Shown: positions 9,608 through 31,442 of the stretch, one piece after another
Layout of the letters: the number at the start of each line of letters is the position of its first letter
Position numbering within the stretch: position 1 is the first letter of the stretch
Virus record (IMG/VR): IMGVR_UViG_3300040801_004034
Location: 157,293 to 221,292 of that record
Length of the DNA stretch: 64,000 bases
Reading direction: 5' to 3' (one strand)
Notes under the pieces: generated by a model
Told to the model about the DNA's origin: nothing
Seen by the model: the letters and a program-made list of their open reading frames with translations, nothing else
The model's database searches: none
Position numbers and translations under genes: made by a program

Positions 9608-9994
9608 TTAATCCCAATTCCAGGTTTCATAATACAAATCATCAACCTCGAACTCATCCCAGAATTCTTTACCGCATGTAGGACAGGTACCATATAATGT
9701 CTTCCAATGACCAGGTTTATTAGGATATCCGGTCATACCACTTGTTCTAACCTTCATTTTAAGATCTTTATGTCCGCAATAATCGTTCTAGATCGTTTCA
9801 ATTTCCTGTACGACTTGTTGCTGAACCTTCTTGATTAGATCTTGTTTATCATTTGTGGTATTAATTTGTAGTTGCAAGTAAAAATGATCTTGTTTACGGT
9901 GATCTACCGTAAACTTATCTTCCATCAAAGCATTCACATTTTTGACATGCACAAACCCTGTCTCTGAGATAGTTCTCCAATCAAATTTTCTCAT
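9608..9994 (-). pseudogene. Zn-ribbon protein interrupted by in-frame TAG at 9788-9790
   Basis: ATG 9994 overlaps the thyA stop; frame continues ...EIETI*NDYCGHKD...CPTCGKEF...WD to TAA 9608. Confidence 0.55.
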
Positions 9995-10869: not shown

Positions 10870-10870
10870 A

Positions 10871-11819: not shown

Positions 11820-12935
11820 CTACAGATCTTCACGCCCAATGTCAACCATAACCGGAAAACGTGGAATACCATCTGGTGTAAGGTTCTGATATCGAATTGT
11901 AGCAAGCTTACCAATGTATTTGTCTTTGTTAACAAGCAGCTCGGTAAACAATTCATCATTACCACGACCACTAGCTCCAAATTCTTTACCATCTTTTGTT
12001 TGACAAATCAACCGACCCATCATACCTGCACGTCGCCCATTACCTGGTGTGATATCAAGCACTAAAAATTCATCATCATCGAATGCTTTATACTTCTGCA
12101 AATGTTTTGTACGTGTGAAAATATACGGCTCGCTCGGATTCTTCAACATGATACCTTCATACCCATCCTCGATATAACTTGCATGAGCTTCTTCAATTGT
12201 TTCAATTGTCGGCTCGTACATAATATTCTCAACAATCTTAATCATTGAATCAATACCTGCAACTTCCATATGAAGAAACTCTTGACGTTCAATTGTGGTC
12301 ATATCAGGTCGATCTGAATCAAACATATCGAATACATGAAACTGTAACTTGCTTGCTGCTTCAGCTAAGTCAGCTGATGTAGGTTTCTTTTTACGTGTTA
12401 AACTGATTATTTTGTTGAAATCAGTATTGTATTCATGATTATAAATTTCACCATCAAGACGTACTGTTGGAAACTTCTCAAAGAAGCTTCCGAGCGCATC
12501 AAACAAATGACCAAGTGTGAAGTATGGTTTATTATTACGACTTACTGCTTCATTTTTGTCAATGATACACCGTAACCCGTCCAGCTTTGGGGAGATAAAT
12601 ACATGCTTCTCAAGATGCTTAGGTTGATATTTCTGTGCTAGGGTAGGACTAAAGTTTGTCTGTGTATCATCTGGCACATCATCAACATTTTCAACATACC
12701 CTTTATTTACATGGTCATCCCACTGCTTTTGTGCGCGTTCCATCGCAACTGTTTGAGGAGTCTTTTCGTTTGCTTTACCAAAGTTATTTCCTTTAGCATA
12801 GGTCGGTGTACTCGTTGTCGTTTTTCCACCTACCTGACCATACTCGGTCCAGAAATGATCATCTTCCCAGAACATTGTCCAGTGCTGAATACTTCCGTTT
12901 TTATTGCGTTTAAATAGCGTTGGTAAATTTTGCAT
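11820..12935 (-). CDS. ATP-dependent DNA ligase (start revised)
   Basis: motif I SPKLDGLRC, LDGEIY, FHVFD, EGIMLK, QKYK, OB domain with PRFP; promoter at 12946-12961. Confidence 0.92.
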   Translation of the reverse strand: MQNLPTLFKRNKNGSIQHWTMFWEDDHFWTEYGQVGGKTTTSTPTYAKGNNFGKANEKTPQTVAMERAQKQWDDHVNKGYVENVDDVPDDTQTNFSPTLAQKYQPKHLEKHVFISPKLDGLRCIIDKNEAVSRNNKPYFTLGHLFDALGSFFEKFPTVRLDGEIYNHEYNTDFNKIISLTRKKKPTSADLAEAASKLQFHVFDMFDSDRPDMTTIERQEFLHMEVAGIDSMIKIVENIMYEPTIETIEEAHASYIEDGYEGIMLKNPSEPYIFTRTKHLQKYKAFDDDEFLVLDITPGNGRRAGMMGRLICQTKDGKEFGASGRGNDELFTELLVNKDKYIGKLATIRYQNLTPDGIPRFPVMVDIGREDL

Positions 12936-12951
12936 AATGATATATATTGTA

Positions 12952-13896
12952 TTACAGTTCCTTTGGTGCATGGACTTTTTCTAATCCATGACCTTTTGTC
13001 TTTTTAATTTTGTCTTTGTTTTTGTTCATCCAGTCTTGAACATACCAAAGTTGACCGCATCCACCGCCAATATCATCTTGACCGGCTGGATTGAAAACAC
13101 GGACGTTGTAACCTGCTTGTAACATCTTGGATGAAAAATCTTGTGCTAACTTCCGTTGCCGTTCATTTGCTGTGGCAATATTTTCATCGCGTTCACAAAT
13201 AACTGATATTGTTGACTGCCAGATTGACGGATCGAAATGTTTGACTAATCGATCAACATCTTCCTGTGAATCATTTTTATCATGAACACAATAATTAAAG
13301 AATGGTTTTCTACCACAAGCTTTATACCATTCAACACCGGTTTCAGAAATCTGTTTTAGCGTCATTGTAGGGCTTGGAATTAACTTCTTTCTAGCTTCAT
13401 CTGTCGATTCATGAACTGAAAACTGTAACCCGATGGTTTGGATCCATTTAGAGATTTTATTCAACTCCTCGAAAGCTTTTATTCCGCCGATTGGAGCTGA
13501 TGTTGAAATCAGAAGTGAAGCTGTAGGATACATTGCATAAAGCGTACCGAGTGCTTTTGATAACTCATTAAAATTCAACATTGGTTCACCCATTGACATA
13601 AACATGATTTGCAGCTTATCGATATCATTCGGATTACAATCGATCTCATTTTCCAACAAGTGTATTGATTGTGATGCAATCTCTTCACCTGTGAACGATC
13701 TTACGAAGTAGTCACCGGCGCCACAAAACCGACACCCTACCGGACAACCAGATTGTGTAGAACAACAGATAACTGTTCGATCTTTGTATGTCGGATACTT
13801 ATACAATACCGATTCTGCAACACCATTGTCCTGAGTGTAAACATACTTGTTTACATTTTCATCACTAGATGTTATTTTTTTAATATTATCCCACAT
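12952..13896 (-). CDS. RlmN/Cfr-family radical SAM RNA methyltransferase
   Basis: CCSTQSGCPVGCRFC, MSMGEPMLN, GQDDIGGGCGQL: cluster CxxxCxxC plus both catalytic Cys of class A RS methyltransferases. Confidence 0.88.
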   Translation of the reverse strand: MWDNIKKITSSDENVNKYVYTQDNGVAESVLYKYPTYKDRTVICCSTQSGCPVGCRFCGAGDYFVRSFTGEEIASQSIHLLENEIDCNPNDIDKLQIMFMSMGEPMLNFNELSKALGTLYAMYPTASLLISTSAPIGGIKAFEELNKISKWIQTIGLQFSVHESTDEARKKLIPSPTMTLKQISETGVEWYKACGRKPFFNYCVHDKNDSQEDVDRLVKHFDPSIWQSTISVICERDENIATANERQRKLAQDFSSKMLQAGYNVRVFNPAGQDDIGGGCGQLWYVQDWMNKNKDKIKKTKGHGLEKVHAPKEL

Positions 13897-13908
13897 ACCG
13901 GTATTATA

Positions 13909-14493
13909 TTACAGTTCCAAAATCTTTTTCGATGTCGGTACCCAATCAGGATCAGTTTTCAACTTCATTGAGACTTTACGAAACAAATCAGCTGTTGAAC
14001 CTTGCATTGTTGTTGGTACCGTATCTTGAACGGTCGAAAGACCAAAACTCTCAATCACACTAATGTAAGGTTTCTGTTCACCTTTCCAGTTCGTTGTAAC
14101 ACCAGCAACTCGTACTGCTGGAAATTCACGGCCTATCCAATCATTACGAATATGTGGCTGAACAACAATTGCTGTTCGCATGTATAGTGAGCTGCCGCAT
14201 CGACCAGGGTAGGATATAATTTGTCCTCGTTCAATCGGTTTACTGTATAAATCTGTAATATTATTAATAATTGCTTTTTTTGTTAAAAATTCTACTGCTT
14301 CTTCCATTGTTAGAACCTTTGCATTTTTACCTTTTGGTCTTTGCATTGATTCAATTTTTTCTTGTTCGTTATTATAAAGACATCCTGAGCAAGTCCAACC
14401 CCCGAACATGCCGGGAGGGCATGAACCTCTTCCCTTCGAACATTTTTCAATGTTACCCTCCCGGCAGATACCACCTTGGTGTAAATAAACCAT
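13909..14493 (-). CDS. hypothetical protein
   Basis: 194-aa ORF in a co-directional run. Confidence 0.55.
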   Translation of the reverse strand: MVYLHQGGICREGNIEKCSKGRGSCPPGMFGGWTCSGCLYNNEQEKIESMQRPKGKNAKVLTMEEAVEFLTKKAIINNITDLYSKPIERGQIISYPGRCGSSLYMRTAIVVQPHIRNDWIGREFPAVRVAGVTTNWKGEQKPYISVIESFGLSTVQDTVPTTMQGSTADLFRKVSMKLKTDPDWVPTSKKILEL

Positions 14494-14799
14494 TTACATA
14501 AACCAAGTTATAACCCAACCAAAAAGCAATGCAAAAGCAGGCTTTAATACAGCAACCACAATACTAAAAATTATCTTTTCTTCTGACGTACGAGTATCTT
14601 CCGGTTCGTTACCGGAATAACCTTTAGTTAGATAATTTATAATTATCGCAATTCCGACTGCTACCGGGATTGTTAATGATGCAATACCAAATGTAGAAAC
14701 GATAAACCATTCCCATAAGATGGTTAATGCGTATCCGCTCCAGATTATACCGAGCGGTGTAATTAGTAATGCAATTACTGCTAGTGCTATTGTTTTCAT
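14494..14799 (-). CDS. small membrane protein
   Basis: three hydrophobic segments. Confidence 0.65.
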   Translation of the reverse strand: MKTIALAVIALLITPLGIIWSGYALTILWEWFIVSTFGIASLTIPVAVGIAIIINYLTKGYSGNEPEDTRTSEEKIIFSIVVAVLKPAFALLFGWVITWFM

Positions 14800-14808
14800 A
14801 TTTTTGTT

Positions 14809-15540
14809 TTATTGCTTTGTAGTGGGCATTAACCACATGTTATTGTTTGAGAAAACTTGCTCCTTGATCATGCTGTAGTATTCAAGCCGTGACAAGGTCA
14901 ACATAGTATCAGCCTTGAAACACTTGAACAATTCCTCACGGATACGCTCTTGTGAAACGTTCTTTAGACCACTTACGAACTCCATGTAGATCATGCAGCG
15001 ATGAATATCCTGATGTAGGTTGAATCCCTTGGTGATTGAAAACCTGAAGTAGCGTAACATACGAAGGTAATCTTCCTTGATTCGATCTTCAGCATTTCCA
15101 ACTGCACGGATAAGCTTCATATTAAGGTCATCCACCCCATGAAAAGGATCGATAATAGTACCATCAGCAAGATCAATAGCAATTGCATTTACAGTTGCGT
15201 CACGACGAGCAAGGTCATCTTCGATACAATCAGCAATGTGGGTTACATCAGGCCGACGACCATCACTGTATTCACCATCCTTACGAGCAAGAGCAACATC
15301 AACTGCACCGAGTCCAGGAATGTTGCATCGTAGAGTCAAAAACCCTTCAGTTGCAAGAAAGACCTCACCACCGATATCTTCAACAGCCTTCACCATGTCA
15401 GCAAAGGTAGGAGCTACCATACACAAATCCAAGTCCTTAGGCTTGCTATTTGCGTCGATCAACTTATCACGTACCCACCCACCAACGATGTACGTTGGGA
15501 AGGGTAGCTTAATGTTAGGAATGTCTAATACTGCTTGCAT
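14809..15540 (-). CDS. class II tRNA nucleotidyltransferase (CCA-adding / poly(A) polymerase family), compact
   Basis: YIVGGWVRD..DLD, DGRRPD, DLARRDATVNAIA, DPFHG, EDYLRMLRYFRF. Confidence 0.9.
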   Translation of the reverse strand: MQAVLDIPNIKLPFPTYIVGGWVRDKLIDANSKPKDLDLCMVAPTFADMVKAVEDIGGEVFLATEGFLTLRCNIPGLGAVDVALARKDGEYSDGRRPDVTHIADCIEDDLARRDATVNAIAIDLADGTIIDPFHGVDDLNMKLIRAVGNAEDRIKEDYLRMLRYFRFSITKGFNLHQDIHRCMIYMEFVSGLKNVSQERIREELFKCFKADTMLTLSRLEYYSMIKEQVFSNNNMWLMPTTKQ

Positions 15541-15937
15541 ATGGTAATTATATGATTGTTCCTATCCGAAATACGGTTCGCTTTTTTTACTGAAAGGGTG
15601 CATTGCATCCCAATGTTTTTTATATGCTTCAGGATCTTTTTTCTTCATACGTTCTACTTCTTCAGCATATCGCTTCAACGGACGATTTGCAATCTCATTG
15701 AATTCATCCTGTGTAATGTTATTGAGATTGATTTCAATATTTCGTAACTCAGGGCATCCAGTCTGCTCACCGCCAAACCGACGCTGTTCAGCACCTTCAG
15801 GGCTGAGATCGATCCCGTATTTGCAGTCACATGTTGAAGGTTCTTTTTCGAACATCATACCGTCATAACTACATTTCGTGCGGCGAAGCAGATGGATGTA
15901 TTTTCTGAGTGTTTCTATGTCTGTTGTAAACATAATA

Positions 15938-16621
15938 TTATAGCGGATTCTGAGTATCCTTACCGTGATGATCTGGAGCACTTCCATTTTGCTTATCCAT
16001 GAACTTTCTCAGATCAGCAAAGTTGATCGGGTAATCATTCTCTTCAACGCTAACTTCGTAGCACTTCATCTTGGAATTCTTGTAAAGACGTCCGAGTTCA
16101 GACTTAACGAGAGTTCCATGAACATGACTGTAAAGCATGTAAGACCCTCCGCCTTGACCATTCCAACTCAACACTGGGTAATGACTCAAGCACACAGCTT
16201 GACCATTGACAAATGCTTCGAAGTAGTTTGGAGTAAACACAACTTGCTTACCCCCGAGATCGAGAACATTTTCATCAACACCGCTAAAGCTTTGATGCCA
16301 ACCCGCATAGTGATTACCAGCAGGTAGGTAAAGAGTCTTGAAGCTCAATCGGTTCAGCAATTCTTCGAATGCTTCCTTCCCACCTGCGCCGAACATAGTA
16401 TCACCAAGTAGGAAACCAACAGTATTCTCATTAGCTACTTCGTTCCAACGTTGGATCAAAGTCTCTCTATGATCAAGAACGGAATCAAATCCGCGCATCT
16501 TCCATAGCGGTACCTTCCACTTTGGATCATGATTAGCATGCAAGCATCCCCAGAACAGAACTTCCTTAGGATCTGCCTTAACCTTAACTGGCTTGTAAAA
16601 TAAATCTTTTAAATTCGACAT
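15938..16621 (-). CDS. calcineurin-like metallophosphoesterase (start revised)
   Basis: CLHANH, LLGD, AGNH, LSHYP, YSHVHG; promoter at 16628-16643. Confidence 0.8.
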   Translation of the reverse strand: MSNLKDLFYKPVKVKADPKEVLFWGCLHANHDPKWKVPLWKMRGFDSVLDHRETLIQRWNEVANENTVGFLLGDTMFGAGGKEAFEELLNRLSFKTLYLPAGNHYAGWHQSFSGVDENVLDLGGKQVVFTPNYFEAFVNGQAVCLSHYPVLSWNGQGGGSYMLYSHVHGTLVKSELGRLYKNSKMKCYEVSVEENDYPINFADLRKFMDKQNGSAPDHHGKDTQNPL

Positions 16622-16628
16622 ATGCGTA

Positions 16629-17069
16629 TTATAAATGTGTTCCTGTTGCAAGTTGAACATAAAATGGTACAAGAGCAATAAGCGTTACTGCGTGAATAAG
16701 CTGATCGATTCCAATTGTATTCCAAAATGCTTTATATTGATCACGTTGCCAGAATCGAGCTGTAAGTCTACTTGTACACCAATCTGTTGCAAAATGTGTT
16801 ACAAAAATATAAAAATATATTAACATATGAAACGAAAATGATCCCCAAAATCCCATATTAGGCAGCTCTGTTACAAAGCAAAGCGGCATCAAGATAAAAA
16901 GAAAAATCATCATGAATACAGTCCCTGTATAAATCGTAACGTGATCTAACATAACCCTGTTATCTGAGATTTTTTGTGTACCTATTTTTCTACTCTGAAG
17001 TAGAAAATCTCCGATATAATGCCCACTAAGTAAGACAGCTATAAAATAAATTGTAATATATTCAATCAT
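16629..17069 (-). CDS. DUF3307-like membrane protein
   Basis: HYIGDFLLQ...H...HFATD...GIDQLIH pattern. Confidence 0.7.
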   Translation of the reverse strand: MIEYITIYFIAVLLSGHYIGDFLLQSRKIGTQKISDNRVMLDHVTIYTGTVFMMIFLFILMPLCFVTELPNMGFWGSFSFHMLIYFYIFVTHFATDWCTSRLTARFWQRDQYKAFWNTIGIDQLIHAVTLIALVPFYVQLATGTHL

Positions 17070-17197
17070 AATCTTCTCCAATTCCAACTGTTCGATGTGC
17101 ATATCTCTCACCGCAAGAATATTCAGCGAGCTCTGAACTGCATAGAGATAATGTTCCGTCCTTCACTCTCTGAAAAAACAGATCGATCTCTAATTCC

Positions 17198-18034
17198 TCA
17201 ATCATGGTCTTCGAGATCGATGTAAATTTTGTCGTTGAACCATGACCAATCTTGTTTAAAGACTGGCGTCTCGTTATCAATGTACCATTTTGTTCTGACA
17301 GGTACCTCACCGATTTTAATATCTGGATGCATATCAGGAAATGCTACTGTTTCAAATTTCTTATAACAAGACGAACCATGCTGTTTGGTAACTGGTAGTT
17401 CATACCAATCAGCGTCATCATCTTCATTTGACATTAACATCTCTTTAAGCTTAGCTGTATTCTTACCTTGTAACTCTTTATGTGAGTAATAAGCTCGAGC
17501 TTGCATCTGAACACTGTTTTTTGCAGCATCTTGCATTCTCCACCACAAGCAGTTTAAAACTTCATAACGTTGTGATAGTGGAAACACACGAGCATCGAAT
17601 TGAGCTTGTTTCATTACCATTGCATCAGCTACAGCAGTTTCATCTAACTGATTACCATAATCAGGTGTTATAGCACGAACCATTCGCAACTGATTAAACT
17701 TACTTGTTGCAAGACTTGCAGCAACACTTGTGATCTTTTGGATGTTTCCGCCAAACCAGATATCAGCTTCACGGCTCATCAGGTCAGTAAACACGATTGT
17801 GATATCATCTGATTGTGTATAACCAAACTGCGCACCCTGGATATTCTCACAAAGAAACTTCATCGTCTCTTGCATATCTTCGATCATACCTTCATCGAAT
17901 GGTCGATCCAACCCTTTTGTATAGGTATGAAATGCTTTACCATCGATGCGTAGCACGTAATATTGTTTTGGTGAAAGATATGTACGAGTGATATTCTCGT
18001 AACCTTTCATGCGATCTCCTAATTCATCACTCAT
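17198..18034 (-). CDS. Thg1-like 3'-5' RNA polymerase / tRNA(His) guanylyltransferase
   Basis: RMKGYE, RIDGKAFHTYT, YTQSDDIT, FDAR, WRMQDAAKNS. Confidence 0.92.
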   Translation of the reverse strand: MSDELGDRMKGYENITRTYLSPKQYYVLRIDGKAFHTYTKGLDRPFDEGMIEDMQETMKFLCENIQGAQFGYTQSDDITIVFTDLMSREADIWFGGNIQKITSVAASLATSKFNQLRMVRAITPDYGNQLDETAVADAMVMKQAQFDARVFPLSQRYEVLNCLWWRMQDAAKNSVQMQARAYYSHKELQGKNTAKLKEMLMSNEDDDADWYELPVTKQHGSSCYKKFETVAFPDMHPDIKIGEVPVRTKWYIDNETPVFKQDWSWFNDKIYIDLEDHD

Positions 18035-18197
18035 GTTGTTATAATATCGTTGTTCCTATTTTACCAACAAAACCATCCGCCGCATTTATTACATTTAACA
18101 CCACCACGTGGTTGTGCTTGGATATCATGATCACATTCTGTATCAGCATCCCAAAGTTCATCTAATTCTGAGACGTTTTCTTTTATTTCATCACCCA

Positions 18198-18614
18198 TTA
18201 CAGCTTAATGTTATTGAGGATCTTCTCCTTTTGCTTTGCAACTACCTCAGCAGGTACCCCATGTACGTTTTCACTCCCATGCAAGTTCTGAACAACATAG
18301 CTCACAACTACATAACCATGCTTTTCAGCAAGTTCGATATACGGCTTACGTTCTTTACCTGTTGTATTGGTGTTGTCAACAATGATACATGCAGTTCTTT
18401 TCAACATATTCAGCTCGACCTGATCTTTGCACCAAGCATGAGCTTGGCCGAGTTTACTCGGATCGAAATCATAACCATCACCCCAGAATAAATCAGCACT
18501 ACATATTTCACAATCTGGGTGCAAAGTTTCGATGAACTTGCTAAAGGTAGACTTACCGCTGCCTGACGCTCCGACAGGCAGGATAAGTACTTTGTTTTGA
18601 ATTAATGGATTCAT
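18198..18614 (-). CDS. P-loop polynucleotide-kinase-like protein (AAA_33)
   Basis: GASGSGKS, CSAD, IVDNTNT, NVHGVP. Confidence 0.8.
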   Translation of the reverse strand: MNPLIQNKVLILPVGASGSGKSTFSKFIETLHPDCEICSADLFWGDGYDFDPSKLGQAHAWCKDQVELNMLKRTACIIVDNTNTTGKERKPYIELAEKHGYVVVSYVVQNLHGSENVHGVPAEVVAKQKEKILNNIKL

Positions 18615-18637
18615 ATAGCTATTATGTTAATGTTCCT

Positions 18638-18838
18638 TTACTTGCTTACTCGCTCACGAATTTCTGCAAGAGAATGCTCGATCAAAAGCTCCATAAGGTC
18701 ATCAGAACTTTGAATCCTAGCTTCAATAACCTCTGTTGGCTCGTTATGGTAAATTGCTCCGGCAGCAACATGTACCTCACCACCACTGAATACATGGCGA
18801 TTGAAATTAATATGCTTGTTTTTTTCTAGTTTAATCAT
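18638..18838 (-). pseudogene. N-terminal fragment of ribose-phosphate pyrophosphokinase (Prs)-like protein
   Basis: FSGGEVHV...ARIQSSDDLMELL matches phage Prs-like N-termini, but the ORF ends at 66 aa against the next promoter. Confidence 0.6.
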
Positions 18839-19060
18839 AATTGTTTTGTCTATTTAAATTGTGTATCCATGTTGATATTAAACGAACGGAAAACATAGTA
18901 TAGTGATCCGATGTAAAATATCACCCAAGTACTCCATGTTGCAAAAACGAAACTATTCCAAGGTAGTTCATATATCACACCTGTAGACCACAGGGTAGCA
19001 AAAAACATCAATATGGAAATGAATTTATGTTTATGTTTTAAAAATCGTCGTATCATATGT

Positions 19061-19843
19061 TTATATTACTGTTGTTCCTTTTTTACATCTACCTTTGAAC
19101 CACCCGTTTGGTATTTCAGTTTTGGTTAAATCAACTTGTTTCATTGTTACACCATTGGTAATCCAATTTGTTCCTTTCTTCGCTTCACTCATTCTTTTTC
19201 TTGTACTAGTCTTTTTTGCAATACCTTTCTGTTTTATGCTTATTTTACGTTTAACATCATCAGGACGCTGTTTACCATAATGACCATTATTCGCGCCTTT
19301 ATTTTTACCTTTCATGCTTTGTGAGATTTTTCTACAATGATCTTTAGAAAATTTCTTGCCTTTGTTAGTACCGGTTCGACCAATATTTGTTTCACTTATT
19401 CTTTTTTTATGTCTTTCAGTCATTCCTCTCACCCAACCTTCAGGTATATTTTTCAGTTTACACCATTTTTCATTATTACCATCGTTTATTAATACTAAAC
19501 CATCACGTGCATGTTTCATACTTTCTCGCCATCGAACCCTGTAATACTCAAACATTCTTGATGATGTAATACGACCTACACCGTTAATACCAGTTTTAAA
19601 AAAAGATAAAGCGGATAGAGCTCTTAACATTTTATAATACTCAACAGAGCCTTTTATTTGCATTTTTACTAGTAGTAAATGCGCAATAAAATGTTCTCTC
19701 GGAGATAATAAAACTATATTACTATGTTTATTATCTCCACCAATACTTTTTGGTATAATATGATGTCTTTCAGCATGGCATGATGTTGATGGATCTGATT
19801 TGCGTTTTTTGACAAGTGATTTGTAAACAGTATGATAATTCAT
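19061..19843 (-). mobile_element. free-standing HNH homing endonuclease with NUMOD3-like repeats
   Basis: ERHHIIPKSIGGDN..NIVLLSPREHFIAHLLL; repeated HKKRISE/HCRKISQ/KRKIS; TATAAATA late box at 19849-19856. Confidence 0.85.
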
Positions 19844-19857
19844 ACTATTATTTATAT

Positions 19858-20868
19858 TCAGCTTTCGGTATACTGGTAATTGATCGTTTTGAAGCTTAGA
19901 TCTTTGTTAAGTCGTTCACTATAAAGATGATTGCGAAGTCTCCATACAAGCCCTTCAGCAGTTGCACCATTAGCATACTTCACTTTCTTCGCTTCTTCGA
20001 CAAGATCATCAGCTGTTTCCCATTTGAATGGACCTTCATAGTAAAGATCAACCATAGGAATACCAAGCGTAGTGCAGATTTGAACTGATTCATTCCAGTC
20101 GCAAAGAATACGACGATCAAGCTTCCAAACATTGAACACCCGGGCGTCAACACCTTTAAGCTTTTCTGGATTCTTTTGAATACCTTCACCTACAAGCTCC
20201 AACTGGAGACCAATACCCACAGGTAGCTTCTCTTTAAGGTTGTACTTGAATACAGGTTGCCAATATTTGCTGTTTCCTGATTCTTTGATTTCGAGATTAC
20301 GAGAGCAAACTTTGAAACCGTCTTCGGCATGATTAACGATAGTTACAGAACTACCATCATGCTTAACAGTTGCAACAACATCTCGCCCTTTCATCATTTC
20401 GATAATATCAGGCATATTCTCAAGACGTTCTTCATCGGTCTTTGGTACAAGATGTGTCGGAAACGACCCAGCTACGTCACCACTTTCATACGATACAGGT
20501 TTTTCGTATTTCTCAACACCGAGATATTCACCCACATCAGTATCAATCAAATCATTCGGGTCGACATCATAATAGCTTGCTGGGAGATATTTCATAAGCT
20601 CACCAAGAGGCATAATTAGTCCATTGCTGTATTCACCACGAAGCTTGATAATATTAATCCTGAACTTCTTATTTTCTAGGAAGCTGAATTCTGGTTTATC
20701 TTTCGGCGCAATAGTATCGACCGGGATATAAACGACGAGATCATCCACTTTGAAATCAACTGCGCTAATTACACGCCAGCTGAGACCATACATCTTAAAG
20801 ATGGTGAGTGAATCTGCATTTGGATGCTCAATAACATCCGAGATTTTTTGTATTGTTGCTAGTTTCAT
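19858..20868 (-). CDS. RNA ligase, DRB0094/Rnl5 family
   Basis: N-terminal KLATIQKI..HPNADSL OB module; KHDGSS, EGLVWR, SFKTIN. Confidence 0.88.
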   Translation of the reverse strand: MKLATIQKISDVIEHPNADSLTIFKMYGLSWRVISAVDFKVDDLVVYIPVDTIAPKDKPEFSFLENKKFRINIIKLRGEYSNGLIMPLGELMKYLPASYYDVDPNDLIDTDVGEYLGVEKYEKPVSYESGDVAGSFPTHLVPKTDEERLENMPDIIEMMKGRDVVATVKHDGSSVTIVNHAEDGFKVCSRNLEIKESGNSKYWQPVFKYNLKEKLPVGIGLQLELVGEGIQKNPEKLKGVDARVFNVWKLDRRILCDWNESVQICTTLGIPMVDLYYEGPFKWETADDLVEEAKKVKYANGATAEGLVWRLRNHLYSERLNKDLSFKTINYQYTES

Positions 20869-21208
20869 ATTATATTTTTATTTTTGTTTCTTGTAGTTAA
20901 CAAAGTCTCTACGTAAAACATTTCCAGTTTTTTGAAAATTTCTGATGAACATTAAGTTGTAGTTTTTTAGACTCTTCTGTTTATCGTAATACCCGAATAC
21001 CTTTGCATTAAATTTTACAACATCACCTGAACGGAATTTAAAGCCAGCAGGTGCAGTGATCCAAACATGATCTGCAACATCAATATCTTTATGTATCACG
21101 TCTTTAATCAAAAGATAATGACCACCGATCTTGCGTGGATTAATTGTTTGTATAGTTGCAGTTACTTCGATCAATTGACCTTTGAACTGCTCCATTGCTT
21201 CTCTGAAT

Positions 21209-22306
21209 TTACTTTTCATCCAATACTGATTTGATTATTTTTTTGATTGTTTGGTTTGGTATTTCCATTCCTTTACGTTTCTTAAATGCAACATCTTTCC
21301 ATGGATTTCTGTACGTCATTTGCATTAAGAACGCAAAATCCTTATCCGAAAGATTTTTGTGCATTTGTGCATATTCATCGATTTTGTTGATTGAAACATC
21401 AACAGATTTTTTAACTTCATCTAGATTTTGAACAAGTTCCTCAACCATGCACCAGCATTCATAATCAAATGTGTTTTTGATATATTTTTTAAATGCTTTG
21501 AATGATGGAAAATCCTGATCAGCATAAAGATTAAGAATATTCTTTTCAGTTGCATTTGATTTAAACGAATGTAACTTGAGATACTCTGCTGATTTTACTT
21601 TCCATAAATCATTACCTTGGTATATGACACAACCTTCAATACCAGATGCTTTTTCGATCGTAGATAGAAGTTCGCTCAGGTCATTGAACTCATATTTCTT
21701 CGGACGTGGCACAAGCATCTCCATTGCAAATGAATCAAGCATTACCTGAGATTCTAGCTCGTATGTATTCTTGTTAATTGCTCCGATCAGATACAAATCG
21801 ATTTCGGGGTAGTCCAAAACAATCCGCTGATTAGGTGTTACAATTTCGAAAAGTAATGATAAATGAGTATGGTTCTGCATCCAAGGACGGATGTTATAGT
21901 ACTTGTCAAGAGCAACATCGAAATCAGCGCTATTGTCTAAAGTAACGTAGCTTTCAGTACCTCTGGTACGAACGTTGAACATGTTCTCACATGCATCGAC
22001 AATCATTAACGAGCCATCCTCTTTAGATACAATTCTCGAATCTAACAGATCAGTTGGAGGCGGAAAGTTACCAGGGTTTTCACCAAAATTAACGAACTTA
22101 GGAAAGCCGCAGCTTAAGGGCTGAAAATCTGACTTACGGTAAATAAGTGAGCGTAAAAATTTATTTTCCTGCGTCCATTCGACACTAGGCAGACCTGGAG
22201 TAATTAAACATGCCTCATCGCCAAAGAATGTAATATCTCTTTGTATAAATTCCTCGATTGGTACACTTTTGAGTGCAGCCTCTACGCGTTTTTGTGCTAA
22301 GTTCAT
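21209..22306 (-). CDS. RNA ligase, T4 Rnl1-like
   Basis: FPKFVNFGE, KEDGSL, FEIVTPNQRIVLDY, EGCVI, KVKSAEY. Confidence 0.85.
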   Translation of the reverse strand: MNLAQKRVEAALKSVPIEEFIQRDITFFGDEACLITPGLPSVEWTQENKFLRSLIYRKSDFQPLSCGFPKFVNFGENPGNFPPPTDLLDSRIVSKEDGSLMIVDACENMFNVRTRGTESYVTLDNSADFDVALDKYYNIRPWMQNHTHLSLLFEIVTPNQRIVLDYPEIDLYLIGAINKNTYELESQVMLDSFAMEMLVPRPKKYEFNDLSELLSTIEKASGIEGCVIYQGNDLWKVKSAEYLKLHSFKSNATEKNILNLYADQDFPSFKAFKKYIKNTFDYECWCMVEELVQNLDEVKKSVDVSINKIDEYAQMHKNLSDKDFAFLMQMTYRNPWKDVAFKKRKGMEIPNQTIKKIIKSVLDEK

Positions 22307-23163
22307 ACTAACTCCAAGCTATAATTTGCTCCCCGTTTATTGAATTTGAACACCCCTTTAACAACCCCGTTAACCATATGCGGTACAACCTTTTCAAACT
22401 CTGCTAATCTGAATGTGTATACAGTTCCACGAACACCAACATGTTTAAATTTGAAGTTACATGCTGATCGACCTCGATTTGCTCCCACAAATTCAAGCTC
22501 AGCTGGAAAGGGTCCAGGAATCTCAAGCATTTCATACCCGCCATAACTTTCATAGGTTAAGTATTCGTTTTTTTCTTTGTTGTATGGTACTTTCATATTA
22601 TTTTTTTCTAATTGGAATTAATGGTACTGGTGATGCTTTACAATCACATGAGAAATCTTTTGTTTTGTCAAATTCTTTTTTACAAACCGTACATTGCCAA
22701 ATGTTCCAATGTATTTTGCGTTCGTATTTTTCTTCTAATAATGCCTCTGATGGCCACTTTGGTGGATCAACTTGACTTTTTGGTGGAATATAACTACCTG
22801 TTCGAACAGGTTCATTATGACAATCGCATGGACATTTATGATTTTTACGAATCTTTACAAATATCCACAAAGCTATCGGCAATAAAGCAACAGCAATTGG
22901 ACTACAACTTGAACATGCTAAAACGATCATACTTCTTTAAATTCAATTTCAAATGTTGCAAGGCTATATTTTTCACCCGGTAAATTGCGACGAATGTTTA
23001 CTAAATCATATTCAGCTTCCTCTTTATCTGATTTGAGATGTTTAAGCGGAACGGTTGGTGAAAAATATCCTCCCATTCGATGCGAGCAATAGTAAAACCC
23101 ATCACAATCACGTTTGATGCAATACTGTTTAATAATCATACAGCAATAATAATGATGTTCCTT

Positions 23164-23973
23164 TTATTGGAATTGTGTGTCGTGACTTAAAAAATGTTGT
23201 GTAATAACACCATTTTGTATAATTGCATAGCTCATTTGCATACAGTCAATACAGTAGTTTTTTAAACCAATCCCATTTTTCTTTTCTCGTTTGATTTTAC
23301 TGTTAATTGTAGTATGACCAACAACTTGTCTTACTTCATCAAGGGGCACGAATTCATAATTCCAATCAAGCCAAACAGGGCTCCCAACATCGCTCAGACC
23401 CATCCGACATGCACCGACATCCCATATCCAATGACCAGCTTCAAACATAAAATGATGTTTTGTTTTATCCCAGTCATCACTCAAACGTTGGATATTATCC
23501 AGTTCGCTCATGAATGGTTTAAAATGTGATGTGTGAAATCCTGCATGTGAAACAACAATATCATCACCGATTTGTGTACAAAGCTTTAGCGATTCAACCC
23601 ATTTTGGATCGATATCCTTATTAAAAGTTTTTGCTTTACTTTTTGACCAACCAGAGCAAAAATAGTCTGAATTTGATTTAGTGTTGATATAGTTTTTATT
23701 ATATGATGCTAAGTATGCAACATCATGATTACCAACATGCCAAATAGCGCGATCACCAAATTCTTCAAACCGTTCTCTGATCCATTCACATGTTGCACCA
23801 ACACCATATATAATTGCTCCGTCTGGTGTTCTGAATGTATCGAAATAGTCACCGTTAAAGATTACAATCTCCCAATCACGTTCAGCTTCTAATACGAGGT
23901 CAGCAAAGCCACCAATGTTTTGGTGTATGTCCGGAATTACTAGTACTTTTGTTTCTTTTGATATTTTTCTCAT
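23164..23973 (-). CDS. calcineurin-like metallophosphoesterase
   Basis: PDIHQ, GDYFD, GNHD, SHAG, QVVGHT. Confidence 0.88.
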   Translation of the reverse strand: MRKISKETKVLVIPDIHQNIGGFADLVLEAERDWEIVIFNGDYFDTFRTPDGAIIYGVGATCEWIRERFEEFGDRAIWHVGNHDVAYLASYNKNYINTKSNSDYFCSGWSKSKAKTFNKDIDPKWVESLKLCTQIGDDIVVSHAGFHTSHFKPFMSELDNIQRLSDDWDKTKHHFMFEAGHWIWDVGACRMGLSDVGSPVWLDWNYEFVPLDEVRQVVGHTTINSKIKREKKNGIGLKNYCIDCMQMSYAIIQNGVITQHFLSHDTQFQ

Positions 23974-24330
23974 TTTCTTTTAATCTCTCAATAAGTTGTT
24001 CGTCAATTTCTGCAGTTATTGTTCTCTGCATATCTTCTCGTGCTTCATCATCATTAAAGACAATACGCAACACTTCAAGACTATTATCTTCCATTCACTT
24101 ATTATACATTAACAACCACTAATTTCCAGTAATTTTAATACTATGAAAGCTGTTCATTGATCTAGTAAACCCCTTTTCATCCCGTGCAAGAAACGCAGCA
24201 GTAGGGGCATGCCATTCAACAACACCTACAAAGATTGGATTCTTATAATCGTTACGCACTTCGCAGGTAATTTTATCACCTGCGCATACTTCTTGACCAT
24301 TATCAGCAAATATTCCAGTTTGTTTATATT

Positions 24331-24702
24331 TCATGATTGGTGCTGAAAGCTATGCAGGTAACATTCTATATTCCTTTTACCTACTGGGTTCATACTATGA
24401 CACATCCAATCTGATGTTAAATCAATATTTTTGTTCATGCAGAATTTTACTAACCACTTTGCACAATCATAACCTGTCTTCTCGAGATCTCCATTCGCAT
24501 TATCACCTGCAGCATAATGAACATCAGCTAGATCATGATCGAATGAGATAAAGTCTGGAAGTTCATTATATAAAATGAAGTGATCACTGATAGTTTTTAC
24601 AAACTCATCATAATTACGGACAATTGTCCATGTACCAACATCTGGCAATTTCACATGGGTTGTGAATTGCGGGCTTCGTATATCATCTAAAAATAAGTTC
24701 AT
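24331..24702 (-). CDS. cyclic-phosphate-processing receiver-domain protein
   Basis: LFLDDIR...ISFDHDL...TGYDCAKWL...HSMNPVG. Confidence 0.8.
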   Translation of the reverse strand: MNLFLDDIRSPQFTTHVKLPDVGTWTIVRNYDEFVKTISDHFILYNELPDFISFDHDLADVHYAAGDNANGDLEKTGYDCAKWLVKFCMNKNIDLTSDWMCHSMNPVGKRNIECYLHSFQHQS

Positions 24703-31307: not shown

Positions 31308-31442
31308 TTTGCTTATTACAATTATGTTTATCTGCTTGTTGAGCAAACATACTTGGACCTGTTGATGCTATTCTATAACCGCAATATTTACAGGTATGAA
31401 TATTCAATGTACCGTTTAACGATTTAAATTTGAAATCATCTC

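What the first reader, a model, noticed from the sequence alone, without database searches (positions are those of the whole stretch)
11820..24702. Unusually complete tRNA/RNA repair-and-modification toolkit in 13 kb
Seen: RlmN-like methyltransferase, CCA-type NTase, two metallophosphoesterases, Thg1-like polymerase, P-loop kinase, Rnl5-like and Rnl1-like ligases, and a cyclic-phosphate receiver domain. A further NTase (28546), ATP-grasp (30453) and YqeY (31443) lie nearby. Known: T4 Pnk/Rnl1 repair PrrC-cut tRNA; Thg1-like proteins rebuild 5' ends; CCA enzymes rebuild 3' ends. Inference: the module can heal anticodon cuts and both acceptor ends, countering several tRNA-targeting defences.
Basis: partly seen in the sequence, partly recalled or inferred. 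Interest (0 to 1): 0.7.

Follow-up and report, generated by a model that had tools for sequence, protein, structure and literature searches.

The report
Phage tRNA end-repair gene cluster
An uncultured 221-kb T4-like phage from a microbial mat packs nine RNA-end healing, sealing, rebuilding and modifying enzymes into 12 kb, a real and compact example of the RNA-repair kits already described in jumbo phages.

Summary
Between 12952 and 24702, all on the minus strand, lie these genes:
- an RlmN/Cfr-like radical-SAM enzyme
- a head-and-neck-only "mini" CCA-adding enzyme
- two metallophosphoesterases
- a bacterial-type Thg1-like 3'-5' polymerase
- a Pnkp-type 5' kinase
- an Rnl5-type and an Rnl1-type RNA ligase
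- a cREC domain protein

Catalytic motifs are intact, apart from one conservative Glu-to-Asp change in the Thg1-like protein. The ORF at 11820-12971 is an ATP-dependent DNA ligase, not the methyltransferase.

The cluster is not accidental. An independent metagenomic relative, L183, carries the kinase, both phosphoesterases, mini-CCA, Rnl1, Thg1 and Rnl5 plus YqeY within about 15 kb. Sub-modules recur in several other phage lineages. However, the nearest complete relative, G002, keeps only three of the genes.

The phage also encodes 39 tRNAs, a tmRNA, PTH2 and a GOLLD RNA.

A tRNA/RNA end-repair kit is the best reading. A counter-defence role is inferred, not shown. Jumbo-phage RNA-repair kits with these same components were described in 2021, so this is a new member of a known kind, notable for its compactness.

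The parts
11820..12971 (-). ATP-dependent DNA ligase (383 aa). It is the neighbour at the 3' end of the block and is probably a replication gene rather than part of the RNA kit.
   Evidence: Pfam DNA_ligase_A_M E 9e-19 plus DNA_ligase_OB_2 E 1.5e-14. Orthologues lie near Thg1 in L034 and L038.
12952..13896 (-). RlmN/Cfr-like radical-SAM RNA methyl synthase (314 aa) lacking the N-terminal accessory domain.
   Evidence: NCBIfam TIGR00048 E 8e-26, but 91 bits is far below the equivalog cut-off of 290. PDB Cfr 9P0P E 3e-15 and RlmN 3RF9 E 2e-9, aligned from about residue 72 of those enzymes. CxxxCxxC, the upstream Cys and the C-terminal GCGQL Cys are present. Homologues lie about 4 kb from Thg1 in L020 and L051.
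13909..14493 (-). Unknown 194-aa protein with an N-terminal Cys-rich (zinc-ribbon-like) segment.
   Evidence: Only a sub-threshold Zn_ribbon hit. The N-terminal 48 aa are 63% identical to an ORF just after Rnl5 in L183. The Atlas search was uninformative.
14494..14799 (-). Small membrane protein (101 aa).
   Evidence: phrog_2169 E 7e-14.
14809..15540 (-). Mini CCA-adding-type tRNA nucleotidyltransferase (243 aa). It has the head and neck only, with no body or tail domain.
   Evidence: PolyA_pol head E 4e-24. PDB 6IBP and 1MIV CCA enzymes, E 2e-25, align to residues 13-213. The GGWVRD...DLD, RRD and EDYLR motifs are present. NCBIfam CCA models are matched only over their first 190-240 positions. 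The best 120 homologues are all 215-268 aa, and 109 of them keep RRD plus EDxxR.
15562..15987 (-). Unknown ORF (141 aa as listed; it probably starts at the internal Met near 15933).
   Evidence: No family hit. The start-site inference comes from reading the sequence.
15938..16621 (-). Calcineurin-like metallophosphoesterase of the phrog_547 / aq_1665-like subfamily (227 aa from the internal Met; the listed ORF runs to 16678). Proposed 3'-end phosphoesterase that partners the CCA enzyme.
   Evidence: phrog_547 E 7e-31. Across 80 homologues H28, G73-D74, G102-N103-H104, H147, H166 and H168 are invariant, and the motif-I Asp is Cys in 19 of 80, including this protein. AF2 pLDDT 95.8, best PDB match 1XM7 at TM 0.58/0.69. 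It is adjacent to or near CCA in L180, L183 and the L006 clade.
16629..17111 (-). DUF3307 membrane protein (160 aa), a conserved neighbour of the metallophosphoesterase.
   Evidence: Pfam DUF3307 E 7e-9 and phrog_2470. It is adjacent to the PE547 orthologue in L188 and near Thg1 and YqeY in L028.
17198..18034 (-). Bacterial-type Thg1-like protein (TLP), a templated 3'-5' RNA polymerase (278 aa).
   Evidence: Pfam Thg1 E 4e-27. PDB BtTLP 4KGK E 1.4e-48. RIDG is present, and SDD replaces the SDE found in 119 of the 120 closest homologues.
18198..18614 (-). Pnkp-type polynucleotide 5'-kinase (138 aa), stand-alone.
   Evidence: AAA_33 E 3e-10 and tRNA_lig_kinase E 1e-3. The best PDB match is the Clostridium thermocellum Pnkp kinase domain 4GP7, E 4e-5, with the P-loop GASGSGKST and the catalytic Asp aligned. 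Orthologue in L180 at 48%.
19061..19843 (-). Free-standing HNH/NUMOD3 homing endonuclease inserted in the module.
   Evidence: NUMOD3, HNH_5 and HNH hits. L183 has a LAGLIDADG gene, and L186 and L187 have GIY-YIG genes, at comparable positions.
19858..20868 (-). Rnl5-type RNA ligase (336 aa): N-terminal OB domain plus C-terminal nucleotidyltransferase.
   Evidence: PF21189 E 8e-14 plus PF09414 E 2e-18. PDB Naegleria RNA ligase 5COT E 2.5e-31, with motif I KHDG aligned to KLDG. Orthologue at 65% directly after Thg1 in L183 and at 38% in L035.
20878..21219 (-). Small predicted OB-fold protein (113 aa) between the two ligases.
   Evidence: No family hit. The Atlas structure search gives TM 0.60-0.75 to OB folds (ComEC DUF4131, tRNA_anti-codon). 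This is a lead only.
21209..22306 (-). Rnl1-type RNA ligase (365 aa).
   Evidence: phrog_562 E 8e-37, spanning profile positions 50-365 of 377. PDB T4 Rnl1 2C5U E 1e-8, with the KEDG, FE(I/F)V, EG and KxKS motifs aligned. Orthologue at 58% in L183 and 29% in L188.
22303..23139 (-). Three small unknown ORFs (97, 110 and 70 aa).
   Evidence: Only unknown-function PHROG hits. The N-terminus of the 110-aa ORF is conserved in L180, L181 and L183.
23164..23973 (-). Metallophosphoesterase (269 aa) with motifs of the lambda-phosphatase type. Proposed 2',3'-cyclic-phosphate / 3'-phosphate healing enzyme.
   Evidence: Pfam Metallophos E 1.3e-10. The DIH, GDxxD, GNHD, H and GHT motifs are invariant in orthologues from L183 (59%) and L180 (44%). 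There is no PDB sequence hit, and the AF2 model was too poor to use.
24119..24334 (-). 71-aa ORF matching the C-terminal part of YopX-family genes in relatives.
   Evidence: tblastn gives 50-52% identity to regions inside genes that carry Pfam YopX in L180 and L183.
24331..24702 (-). cREC (cyclic-phosphate-processing receiver) domain protein (123 aa).
   Evidence: PF20274 E 1.5e-20 and phrog_1479 E 3e-27. The acidic residues (LDD, FDHD) can be read in the sequence. cREC lies within about 1-11 kb of Thg1 in four other viral records.
28546..29607 (-). Pol-beta-superfamily nucleotidyltransferase of an uncharacterised, phage-dominated family (353 aa). Peripheral to the module.
   Evidence: No Pfam or NCBIfam hit. 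phrog_24943 E 2e-23. GDIDIV and IDLIF motifs. Atlas structure TM 0.40-0.44 to Pol X palm/thumb. It is not RlaP: no BLASTP similarity, and there is no PF10127 hit in the genome.
30453..31346 (-). R2K-clade ATP-grasp protein (297 aa). Peripheral, with no tested link to the module.
   Evidence: PF14243 and PF18299, E 2.5e-10.
31443..31898 (-). YqeY (GatB-C-like) protein (151 aa), which recurs next to the module in relatives.
   Evidence: PF09424 E 4e-23. Orthologues at 45-53% in L180, L181 and L183, and YqeY genes near Thg1 in L028 and L187.

Best explanation
The block 12952-24702 is an accessory gene cluster of a very distant T4-like jumbo myovirus. All genes lie on the minus strand, are tightly packed and often overlap. 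The cluster encodes a multi-step RNA (most likely tRNA) end-repair kit. The chemistry below is inferred from characterised homologues.

1. Healing of broken ends that carry 2',3'-cyclic-P and 5'-OH. The cREC protein and the lambda-phosphatase-type metallophosphoesterase (23164-23973) would restore a 3'-OH. The stand-alone Pnkp-type kinase (18198-18614) would restore a 5'-P.
2. Sealing. The Rnl1-type ligase would close breaks in single-stranded loops such as the anticodon loop. The Rnl5-type ligase would close nicks within base-paired stems.
3. Rebuilding the 5' end. The Thg1-like polymerase would re-add missing 5' nucleotides, using the 3' acceptor strand as template.
4. Rebuilding the 3' end. 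The aq_1665-like metallophosphoesterase (15938-16621) would clear a terminal phosphate. The head-and-neck-only CCA enzyme (14809-15540) would then re-add C, C and A.
5. Modification. An RlmN/Cfr-like radical-SAM enzyme would methylate an adenine in tRNA or rRNA.

The kit would keep the tRNA pool usable during infection, when host or rival nucleases attack tRNAs. That pool comprises host tRNAs plus the phage's own 39 tRNAs.

Shown: gene presence, family assignment, motif integrity and co-clustering across lineages.
Inferred: substrates, order of steps, co-transcription and the counter-defence purpose.
For: - Family assignments and motif checks.
- Co-clustering in L183/L184. Identities: MPE 59%, mini-CCA 52%, PE547 36%, Rnl1 58%, Thg1 54%, Rnl5 65%, YqeY 45%. 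An AAA_33 kinase gene is cut by the locus start. All lie within about 15 kb.
- L180: kinase, MPE, PE547 directly upstream of mini-CCA, and YqeY.
- L188: Thg1, kinase, MPE, DUF3307 and Rnl1.
- L187: a PHA02142-OB ORF, then Thg1, RlaP, kinase and YqeY.
- L006 clade: Thg1, MPE, RlaP and a full-length CCA with an HD domain.
- The cultured Arthrobacter phage Atuin has RNA ligase, polynucleotide kinase and mini-CCA together.
- Elsewhere the genome carries 39 tRNAs, a tmRNA and PTH2, showing heavy investment in translation rescue.
- A published framework for jumbo-phage RNA repair names the same components, including cRec, CCA and Thg1 (PMC7824862).
- Established knowledge, from memory: T4 Pnkp and Rnl1 reverse PrrC cleavage of tRNA-Lys, and bacterial TLPs repair 5'-truncated tRNAs in vitro.
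Against: - No functional or expression data. No same-sample RNA run listed holds the module.
- The host is unknown.
- The nearest complete relative, G002 (DNA polymerase 45% identical), keeps only the DNA ligase, PE547 and Rnl5. The kit is therefore dispensable and patchy.
- The TLP carries Asp in place of the catalytic Glu, which 119 of its 120 closest homologues keep.
- The CCA enzyme lacks the tRNA-binding body and tail domains.
- The substrate of PE547 is unknown. Its closest solved relative has no known function.
- Nothing ties either ligase to tRNA rather than other RNAs.
- The promoter and terminator scans are no better than shuffled sequence, so the single-operon idea rests on gene packing alone.
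Confidence: 0.7

Rival explanations
1. The kit mainly serves maturation and upkeep of the phage's own 39 tRNAs rather than repair of nuclease damage. The CCA enzyme would complete the phage tRNAs that lack an encoded CCA. The Thg1-like enzyme would supply the missing G-1 of the phage tRNA-His. The RlmN-like enzyme would modify phage tRNAs.
For: - A large tRNA array lies at 125.5-143.2 kb.
- Five Rfam-supported phage tRNAs (Pro, Asn, Gln, Leu-aag, Val-aac) have no encoded CCA.
- The phage tRNA-His has T at -1, C1:G72 and A73, so G-1 is not encoded.
- Nineteen of 78 Thg1 loci have tRNA genes within 10 kb.
Against: - About 32 of the 39 ARAGORN-predicted tRNAs do encode CCA.
- Relative G002 has the same tRNA-His design but neither Thg1 nor a CCA enzyme.
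- No tRNA-His gene lies near Thg1 in any of the 78 loci.
- The enzyme is of the BtTLP type. From memory, that type adds nucleotides by Watson-Crick templating and handles A73 poorly.
- The kinase, two phosphoesterases, cREC and two ligases have no role in ordinary tRNA maturation.
Confidence: 0.2
2. The genes are a loose collection of nucleic-acid enzymes with unrelated jobs that merely share a hyperplastic early region. On this view Rnl1 is a tail-fibre attachment factor like T4 gp63. The kinase, phosphatases and Rnl5 do DNA or RNA-primed nick repair. The PolyA_pol protein tails RNA.
For: - The block sits beside replication and nucleotide-metabolism genes: td, DNA ligase and DenV.
- Gene order is shuffled among relatives, and homing endonucleases are inserted.
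- G002 lacks most of the genes.
- phrog_562 is annotated with the dual role of T4 gp63.
Against: - The same seven or eight families re-cluster within about 15 kb in L183, despite only 36-65% identity and a different order.
- Recurrent pairings (MPE with CCA, Thg1 with Rnl5, MPE with DUF3307) appear in several lineages.
- The CCA-specific motifs RRD and EDxxR are conserved across the mini-CCA family.
Confidence: 0.1
3. The kit repairs RNAs other than tRNA. Candidates are rRNA loops or mRNAs cut by ribosome-dependent or collateral RNases. The RlmN/Cfr-like enzyme would act on 23S rRNA A2503.
For: - Rnl5-type ligases seal nicks in duplex RNA generally (from memory).
- RlmN and Cfr act on 23S rRNA, and the closest solved relative here is Cfr.
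- The tmRNA and PTH2 point to rescue of stalled ribosomes.
Against: - Thg1-like and CCA enzymes are dedicated to tRNA acceptor ends.
- Rnl1 keeps the region that aligns with the T4 enzyme's C-terminal part in the PHROG profile.
- YqeY, a GatB-C-like domain, recurs beside the kit.
Confidence: 0.12

Closest known systems
Phage T4 Pnkp + Rnl1 tRNA restriction-repair pathway (reverses PrrC)
   Same: It has an Rnl1-family ligase with all nucleotidyl-transfer motifs, plus 5'-kinase and 3'-phosphoesterase activities for healing. The phage is T4-like (gp20 portal, gp15, gp43-type polymerase).
   Different: The kinase resembles the CthPnkp kinase domain rather than T4 Pnk, and it stands alone. The phosphatase is calcineurin-type, not HAD. 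A cREC protein, a second ligase (Rnl5 type), a TLP, a mini-CCA and an RlmN-like enzyme are added.
Jumbo-phage RNA-repair systems (Iyer et al. 2021, PMC7824862; Burroughs & Aravind 2016, from memory)
   Same: The component list is the same: ATP-dependent RNA ligases, polynucleotide kinase, calcineurin-like phosphoesterase, cRec, CCA-adding enzyme and Thg1, alongside large tRNA sets and PTH2.
   Different: That work reports phyletic patterns, with Thg1 'only sporadically present'. Here all components are contiguous in 12 kb. RlaP and RtcB are absent. The CCA enzyme is the short form.
Bacterial Pnkp/Hen1 RNA repair (Clostridium thermocellum)
   Same: The kinase is most similar to the CthPnkp kinase domain. 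It is paired with a calcineurin-type phosphoesterase and an adenylyltransferase-type ligase.
   Different: The three activities sit on separate polypeptides. I did not look for a Hen1 methyltransferase. The ligases belong to the Rnl1 and Rnl5 families, not to the Pnkp ligase domain.
Bacillus thuringiensis Thg1-like protein (BtTLP, PDB 4KGK)
   Same: E 1.4e-48 over the whole length, with the RIDG and SD carboxylates conserved.
   Different: It has two insertions and is 278 aa against 245. Asp replaces the third catalytic carboxylate, a change unique among the 120 closest homologues.
Class II CCA-adding enzymes (e.g. 1MIV, 6IBP) and E. coli CCA with HD phosphohydrolase domain
   Same: Head and neck are present, with motif A (DxD), motif B (RRD) and motif D (EDxxR). 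A phosphoesterase is encoded next door, which parallels the E. coli fusion functionally (my inference).
   Different: There is no body or tail domain. It belongs to a populous family of 215-268-aa proteins, mostly from phages and metagenomes. The neighbouring phosphoesterase is calcineurin-like, not HD.
Arthrobacter phage Atuin genes 173-178 (cultured, annotated)
   Same: RNA ligase, polynucleotide kinase and a 243-aa tRNA nucleotidyltransferase (48% identical) lie within 4 kb, beside tRNA genes.
   Different: No Thg1, cREC, Rnl5 or RlmN-like gene is annotated in that stretch.

Membership tests
Rnl1 (T4 RNA ligase 1 family) | Motif I lysine in KxDG | tested here: met
   KEDG aligns with K99-EDG of T4 Rnl1 (2C5U), E 1e-8.
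Rnl1 (T4 RNA ligase 1 family) | Motifs III, IV and V (FExV, EG, KxK) | tested here: met
   FEIV, IEGCV and KVKS align with FEFV, IEGYV and KIKS.
Rnl1 (T4 RNA ligase 1 family) | C-terminal domain conferring tRNA specificity | tested here: inconclusive
   The PHROG 562 alignment reaches profile position 365 of 377. The pairwise alignment to T4 Rnl1 stops at residue 254. No structure was compared.
Rnl5 (DraRnl/NgrRnl family) | N-terminal OB domain followed by a C-terminal nucleotidyltransferase with KxDG | tested here: met
   PF21189 at residues 3-88 and PF09414 at 163-315. KHDG aligns with KLDG of 5COT, E 2.5e-31.
Rnl5 (DraRnl/NgrRnl family) | Seals 3'-OH/5'-P nicks in duplex RNA | not testable with these tools
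   Needs a biochemical assay.
Thg1-like proteins (bacterial TLP) | Thg1 palm domain above the Pfam threshold, closest to BtTLP | tested here: met
   95.3 bits against a cut-off of 29.2. 4KGK E 1.4e-48.
Thg1-like proteins (bacterial TLP) | Three catalytic carboxylates (D in RxDG; D and E in SDE) | tested here: inconclusive
   RIDG and the SD Asp are present. The Glu is Asp (SDD), whereas 119 of the 120 closest homologues have SDE.
Class II CCA-adding enzyme | Head-domain motifs A (GGxVRD...DxD), B (RRD) and D (EDxxR) | tested here: met
   Alignment to 6IBP and direct reading of the sequence.
Class II CCA-adding enzyme | Body and tail domains that bind the tRNA elbow | tested here: not met
   The protein is 243 aa. 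Matches end at residues 213-228, and the NCBIfam models are matched only over their N-terminal halves. I therefore file it as a mini-CCA-type NTase, not as a canonical CCA enzyme.
Pnkp-type polynucleotide kinase-phosphatase | P-loop kinase with a catalytic Asp | tested here: met
   GASGSGKST and SAD align with the CthPnkp kinase 4GP7.
Pnkp-type polynucleotide kinase-phosphatase | Kinase, phosphatase (and ligase) fused in one polypeptide | tested here: not met
   The kinase (18198-18614) and the phosphoesterase (23164-23973) are separate genes 4.5 kb apart.
Calcineurin-like metallophosphoesterases | Motifs DxH, GDxxD, GNH[DE], H and GH | tested here: met
   The 269-aa protein has all five, invariant in its orthologues. 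The 227-aa protein has CxH (Cys in 19 of 80 family members) plus the other four invariant motifs and an MPE fold.
cREC (cyclic-phosphate-processing receiver) | PF20274 above threshold, conserved acidic residues, linkage to RNA ligases | tested here: met
   74.1 bits against a cut-off of 27. LDD and FDHD can be read in the sequence. The gene lies 2 kb from Rnl1. Its catalytic activity has never been tested, here or, to my knowledge, elsewhere.
RlmN/Cfr radical-SAM methyl synthases | CxxxCxxC cluster plus the two mechanistic cysteines | tested here: met
   Alignment with Cfr 9P0P and direct reading of the sequence.
RlmN/Cfr radical-SAM methyl synthases | Full-length architecture and equivalog-level score | tested here: not met
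   It lacks the N-terminal ~70 residues. It scores 90.9 bits against the TIGR00048 cut-off of 290. It is a distant relative, not an RlmN or Cfr orthologue.
RlaP NTase (for the 353-aa protein at 28546-29607) | PF10127 match | tested here: not met
   No PF10127 hit in the whole genome. No BLASTP similarity to the RlaP of L006.

The most novel reading that the evidence does not exclude
The cluster is a conserved, self-contained tRNA-stem and tRNA-end repair pathway with two undescribed two-enzyme steps.

(a) The Thg1-like 3'-5' polymerase would fill in missing nucleotides on the 5' strand of a stem, and the adjacent Rnl5-type ligase would seal the resulting nick. Thg1 and Rnl5 are neighbours in L183/L184 and L035. 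In L187 an ORF with a faint PHA02142-OB match lies directly upstream of Thg1. The two genes lie near each other in L034 and in this window.

(b) An aq_1665-like metallophosphoesterase, often with a DUF3307 membrane protein beside it, would clear the 3' phosphate for a body-less mini-CCA enzyme. This would replace the fused CCA-HD enzyme of bacteria.
Probability: 0.22. Interest if true: 0.7.

Novelty: new member of a known kind. Interest (0 to 1): 0.45.

Why it matters
Many anti-phage systems and bacterial toxins disable tRNAs. Only the T4 Pnkp/Rnl1 answer to them has been worked out experimentally.

This locus and its relative L183 offer a compact, natural set of about nine genes that could be cloned as one piece. 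That set would let someone ask which kinds of tRNA damage a phage can reverse: anticodon-loop cuts, stem nicks, 5' truncation, or 3' CCA loss or blockage.

It also gives genomic context to four poorly understood families: cREC, mini-CCA, aq_1665-like metallophosphoesterases and DUF3307.

Tried and rejected
- **Megablast of the 12.9-kb block against cultured phages:** no match. The phage has no close cultured relative; its DNA polymerase is only about 29% identical to those of T4-likes.
- **Thg1 exists to add G-1 to the phage tRNA-His (T at -1, A73):** weakened. Relative G002 has the same tRNA-His design but no Thg1. No tRNA-His lies near Thg1 in any of 78 loci.
- **The 353-aa NTase is RlaP:** rejected.
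- **Complex prediction of mini-CCA with its neighbouring phosphoesterase:** the tool returned 'no answer'. This is not evidence either way.
- **AlphaFold model of the 269-aa phosphoesterase from a 3-sequence alignment:** pLDDT 45, unusable, so I ran no fold search on it.
- **PDB sequence search for the same protein:** no hit.
- **Promoter and terminator scan:** counts equal those of shuffled sequence.
- **Rfam on the window:** nothing.
- **Metatranscriptomes of the same sample:** no contig laid on the module.
- **TAG recoding suggested by the tRNA(CTA):** rejected, because TAG ends 60 of 324 ORFs.
- **A possible third ligase at genome 85897-86802:** only a sub-threshold PF09414 match, with no Pfam or PDB support.
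- **Atlas search for the 194-aa unknown:** uninformative.
- **Whole-record search of the L180 contig:** the record is not held.

Full report
**Context**

The window is the last 64 kb of a 221,292-bp IMG/VR virus record that CheckV rates as complete. Its GC content is 35.5%. The DNA comes from a microbial-mat metagenome. A 201-kb contig from the same sample carries the stretch without differences.

The phage is a very distant T4-like myovirus:
- The window encodes a T4-type portal (gp20), a gp15 tail-sheath stabiliser and thymidylate synthase.
- The rest of the genome encodes a tail sheath, a gp43-type DNA polymerase, a gp46-like nuclease and a ribonucleotide reductase.
- The polymerase is only about 29% identical to those of cultured T4-likes.
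- It is 45% identical to its two nearest IMG/VR relatives.
- Megablast of the block against cultured phages finds nothing.

**The observation**

All sizeable ORFs between 10 and 33 kb lie on the minus strand. They are tightly packed and often overlap by a few bases. Read 5' to 3' on that strand, profile searches give the following.

| Coordinates | Assignment | Evidence |
|---|---|---|
| 24331-24702 | cREC | |
| 23164-23973 | Calcineurin-type metallophosphoesterase (269 aa) | |
| 21209-22306 | Rnl1-type ligase | PHROG 562, |
| 20878-21219 | Small protein, OB fold predicted | |
| 19858-20868 | Rnl5-type ligase | |
| 19061-19843 | HNH/NUMOD3 homing endonuclease | |
| 18198-18614 | P-loop kinase | |
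| 17198-18034 | Thg1-like protein | |
| 16629-17111 | DUF3307 membrane protein | |
| 15938-16621 | Second metallophosphoesterase (227 aa) | PHROG 547, |
| 14809-15540 | PolyA_pol-head nucleotidyltransferase | |
| 12952-13896 | RlmN/Cfr-like radical-SAM protein | |
| 11820-12971 | ATP-dependent DNA ligase | |

The three nearby genes check out as follows. The R2K ATP-grasp and YqeY are confirmed. The 353-aa protein at 28546-29607 has no Pfam hit. It does have a GDIDIV Pol-beta motif, a PHROG match and a weak structural likeness to the Pol X palm. It is not RlaP.

**Are the enzymes plausibly active?**

- **Rnl1-like ligase.** It aligns with T4 Rnl1 (E 1e-8). KEDG, FEIV, EG and KVKS fall on the essential residues of T4 Rnl1.
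- **Rnl5-like ligase.** It matches the Naegleria RNA ligase (E 2.5e-31), with KHDG at motif I and the OB-then-NTase domain order.
- **Kinase.** Its closest solved relative is the kinase domain of Clostridium thermocellum Pnkp. The P-loop and the catalytic Asp are aligned.
- **269-aa phosphoesterase.** All five calcineurin motifs are present and invariant in its two orthologues.
- **227-aa phosphoesterase.**
  - It belongs to a large family with 2,737 representatives at E ≤ 0.001.
  - Eighty aligned members share invariant GD, GNH, H and HxH motifs.
  - The motif-I Asp is Cys here and in 19 of the 80, so this is a recurrent natural variant rather than a lesion.
  - A confident model (pLDDT 95.8) matches best the Aquifex protein aq_1665 (1XM7), whose function is unknown.
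- **Radical-SAM protein.** It keeps the CxxxCxxC cluster and both mechanistic cysteines of RlmN/Cfr. It lacks their N-terminal domain and scores far below the equivalog cut-offs.
- **Thg1-like protein.** It is of the bacterial type (BtTLP 4KGK, E 1.4e-48). It is the only one of the 120 closest homologues with SDD instead of SDE at the third catalytic carboxylate. The change is conservative, but it is a caveat.
- **CCA-type enzyme.**
  - It has motif A (DxD), RRD and EDxxR.
  - It ends after the neck, so it has no body or tail domain.
  - This is not a truncation accident. The best 120 homologues are all 215-268 aa, although proteins up to 425 aa were eligible.
  - Of those, 109 keep RRD and EDxxR.
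  - Cultured phages of Arthrobacter, Microbacterium, Synechococcus and Cellulophaga carry the same short form.

**Co-conservation**

*Nearest complete relative.* G002 (209 kb) lacks Thg1. By tblastn it shares only the DNA ligase, the 227-aa phosphoesterase and the Rnl5-type ligase. The kit is therefore not a fixed feature of the lineage.

*Other lineages.* The genes do travel together elsewhere.
- **L183/L184** (30-kb JGI contig, reached through the Thg1 homologue P0131). Within about 15 kb it carries:
  - an AAA_33 kinase
  - the 269-aa phosphoesterase (59% identical)
  - mini-CCA (52%)
  - the 227-aa phosphoesterase (36%)
  - Rnl1 (58%)
  - a LAGLIDADG endonuclease
  - Thg1 (54%)
  - Rnl5 (65%)
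  - YqeY (45%)

  The gene order differs from the window.
- **L180.** Kinase, 269-aa phosphoesterase, the 227-aa phosphoesterase directly upstream of mini-CCA (68%), and YqeY.
- **L188.** Thg1, kinase, phosphoesterase next to DUF3307, and Rnl1.
- **L187.** An ORF with a PHA02142-type OB domain directly upstream of Thg1, followed by RlaP, a kinase and, further on, YqeY.
- **L006 clade** (about 20 related IMG/VR contigs). Thg1, metallophosphoesterase, cysteine-desulfurase-like protein, RlaP and a full-length CCA enzyme with an HD domain, with an Rnl5-type ligase 9 kb upstream.
- **Arthrobacter phage Atuin.** RNA ligase, polynucleotide kinase and mini-CCA together.

*How complete is the kit compared with others?* I searched 45 large Thg1-positive viral records in full.

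| Family | Records with it (of 45) |
|---|---|
| PolyA_pol (CCA-type) | 15 |
| PF09414 ligase | 25 |
| Rnl1 | 17 |
| cREC | 7 |
| All four | 3 (G036, G040, G047) |

In those three records the genes are spread over tens to hundreds of kilobases. The kit is therefore at the complete end of a known spectrum. Its compactness is what stands out.

**Wider genome**

- Upstream of the window the phage has 39 ARAGORN tRNAs. Rfam supports 35 of them.
- It also has a tmRNA, a PTH2 peptidyl-tRNA hydrolase inside the tRNA array and a GOLLD RNA.
- RtcB and RlaP are absent.

**Mechanism**

From the biochemistry of the characterised homologues, I infer a healing, sealing and rebuilding scheme.
1. cREC and the 269-aa phosphoesterase convert 2',3'-cyclic or 3'-phosphate ends to 3'-OH.
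2. The kinase phosphorylates 5'-OH ends.
3. Rnl1 seals loop breaks, and Rnl5 seals nicks in stems.
4. The TLP rebuilds 5' nucleotides against the 3' acceptor strand.
5. The 227-aa phosphoesterase and the mini-CCA enzyme restore the 3' end.
6. The RlmN-like enzyme methylates an adenine.

Only gene content, motifs and synteny are shown. Substrates, order of steps and purpose are inferred.

**Rivals**

- **Maturation of the phage's own tRNAs** is a real partial alternative.
  - For it: five Rfam-supported tRNAs lack an encoded CCA, and the phage tRNA-His lacks an encoded G-1 and has A73.
  - Against it: G002 has the same tRNA-His design without Thg1 or a CCA enzyme. Most of the tRNAs encode CCA. 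The healing and sealing enzymes have no maturation role.
- **A chance assembly of unrelated enzymes** is contradicted by the recurrent re-clustering.
- **Repair of rRNA or mRNA** cannot be excluded for the ligases and the RlmN-like protein.

**Comparison and novelty**

The logic is that of T4 Pnkp/Rnl1 and of bacterial Pnkp. The full parts list was already laid out for jumbo phages by Iyer et al. 2021 (PMC7824862). That list includes ligases, kinase, calcineurin-like phosphoesterases, cRec, CCA-adding enzyme, sporadic Thg1, PTH2 and large tRNA sets.

I therefore file this locus as a new member of a known kind. Its distinguishing points are:
- contiguity
- a split Pnkp-like healing set
- the mini-CCA
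- the recurrent pairings Thg1 with Rnl5, and metallophosphoesterase with CCA or DUF3307

Those pairings suggest specific sub-pathways that have not been tested.

**What led nowhere**

- Complex prediction gave no answer.
- The model of the 269-aa phosphoesterase was too poor to use.
- No transcripts were found.
- The promoter and terminator scans were uninformative.

Noticed in passing
L087:3025-3472 (genome 143025-143472, + strand; outside the window): A GOLLD RNA (Rfam RF02032, 179 bits against a gathering score of 150) lies at the 3' edge of the phage tRNA array. A tRNA-like element is embedded in it (ARAGORN 'Tyr-ata', 143094-143167).
   Followed up: no
L086/L087 (genome 125549-143167; outside the window): An array of 39 ARAGORN tRNAs (35 above the Rfam gathering score) plus a tmRNA (140670-141018, tag GENQLMAA). 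At least five HNH/NUMOD3 homing-endonuclease ORFs are interspersed among them.
   Followed up: partly
genome 138150-138226 and 138388-138729 (L086): An amber-suppressor-type tRNA (anticodon CTA) lies just upstream of a PTH2 peptidyl-tRNA hydrolase gene. TAG still ends 60 of about 324 ORFs, so nothing suggests stop-codon reassignment.
   Followed up: partly
genome 139447-139523 (L086) and G002 37698-37772 (L170): The phage tRNA-His has T at -1, C1:G72 and discriminator A73, so G-1 is not encoded. The 45%-polymerase relative G002 has the same design although it lacks Thg1. This may say something about the HisRS identity rules of the unknown host.
   Followed up: partly
window 17198-18034: The Thg1-like protein has SDD where 119 of its 120 closest homologues have SDE, the catalytic Glu.
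   Followed up: partly
window 16629-17111 with 15938-16621; L188:6607-7703: A DUF3307 membrane protein is adjacent to the aq_1665-like metallophosphoesterase both here and in L188. It also lies near Thg1 and YqeY in L028. This hints at a functional pair.
   Followed up: partly
window 54655-55647: A Band_7/SPFH protein here has orthologues immediately next to Thg1 in L062 and about 3 kb from Thg1 in L187. Arthrobacter phage Atuin also has a band-7-like gene near its RNA ligase, kinase and CCA genes.
   Followed up: no
window 19061-19843; L183:8970-9923; L186:11347-12042; L187:10192-11139: Homing endonucleases of different families (HNH, LAGLIDADG, GIY-YIG) are inserted independently next to Thg1 or the ligase genes in different lineages.
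   Followed up: no
window 1103-11338 and 26315-26734: The block is flanked by a T4-type portal (gp20), a gp15 homologue, a phosphoribosyltransferase, thymidylate synthase and DUF5662. On the other side lies a DenV-type pyrimidine-dimer glycosylase. An SprT-like protein (43426-43998) and a DUF932 protein (61755-62795) lie further along the window.
   Followed up: no
L180:15231-16436: An IS605 OrfB/TnpB (Cas12f-like) gene sits inside the related phage contig, close to its kinase, phosphoesterase and CCA region.
   Followed up: no
genome 85897-86802 (L084:5897-6802): A 301-aa ORF gives a sub-threshold PF09414 match (E 1.5e-4) but has no Pfam or PDB support. It may be a third, highly divergent ligase-like gene.
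   Followed up: partly
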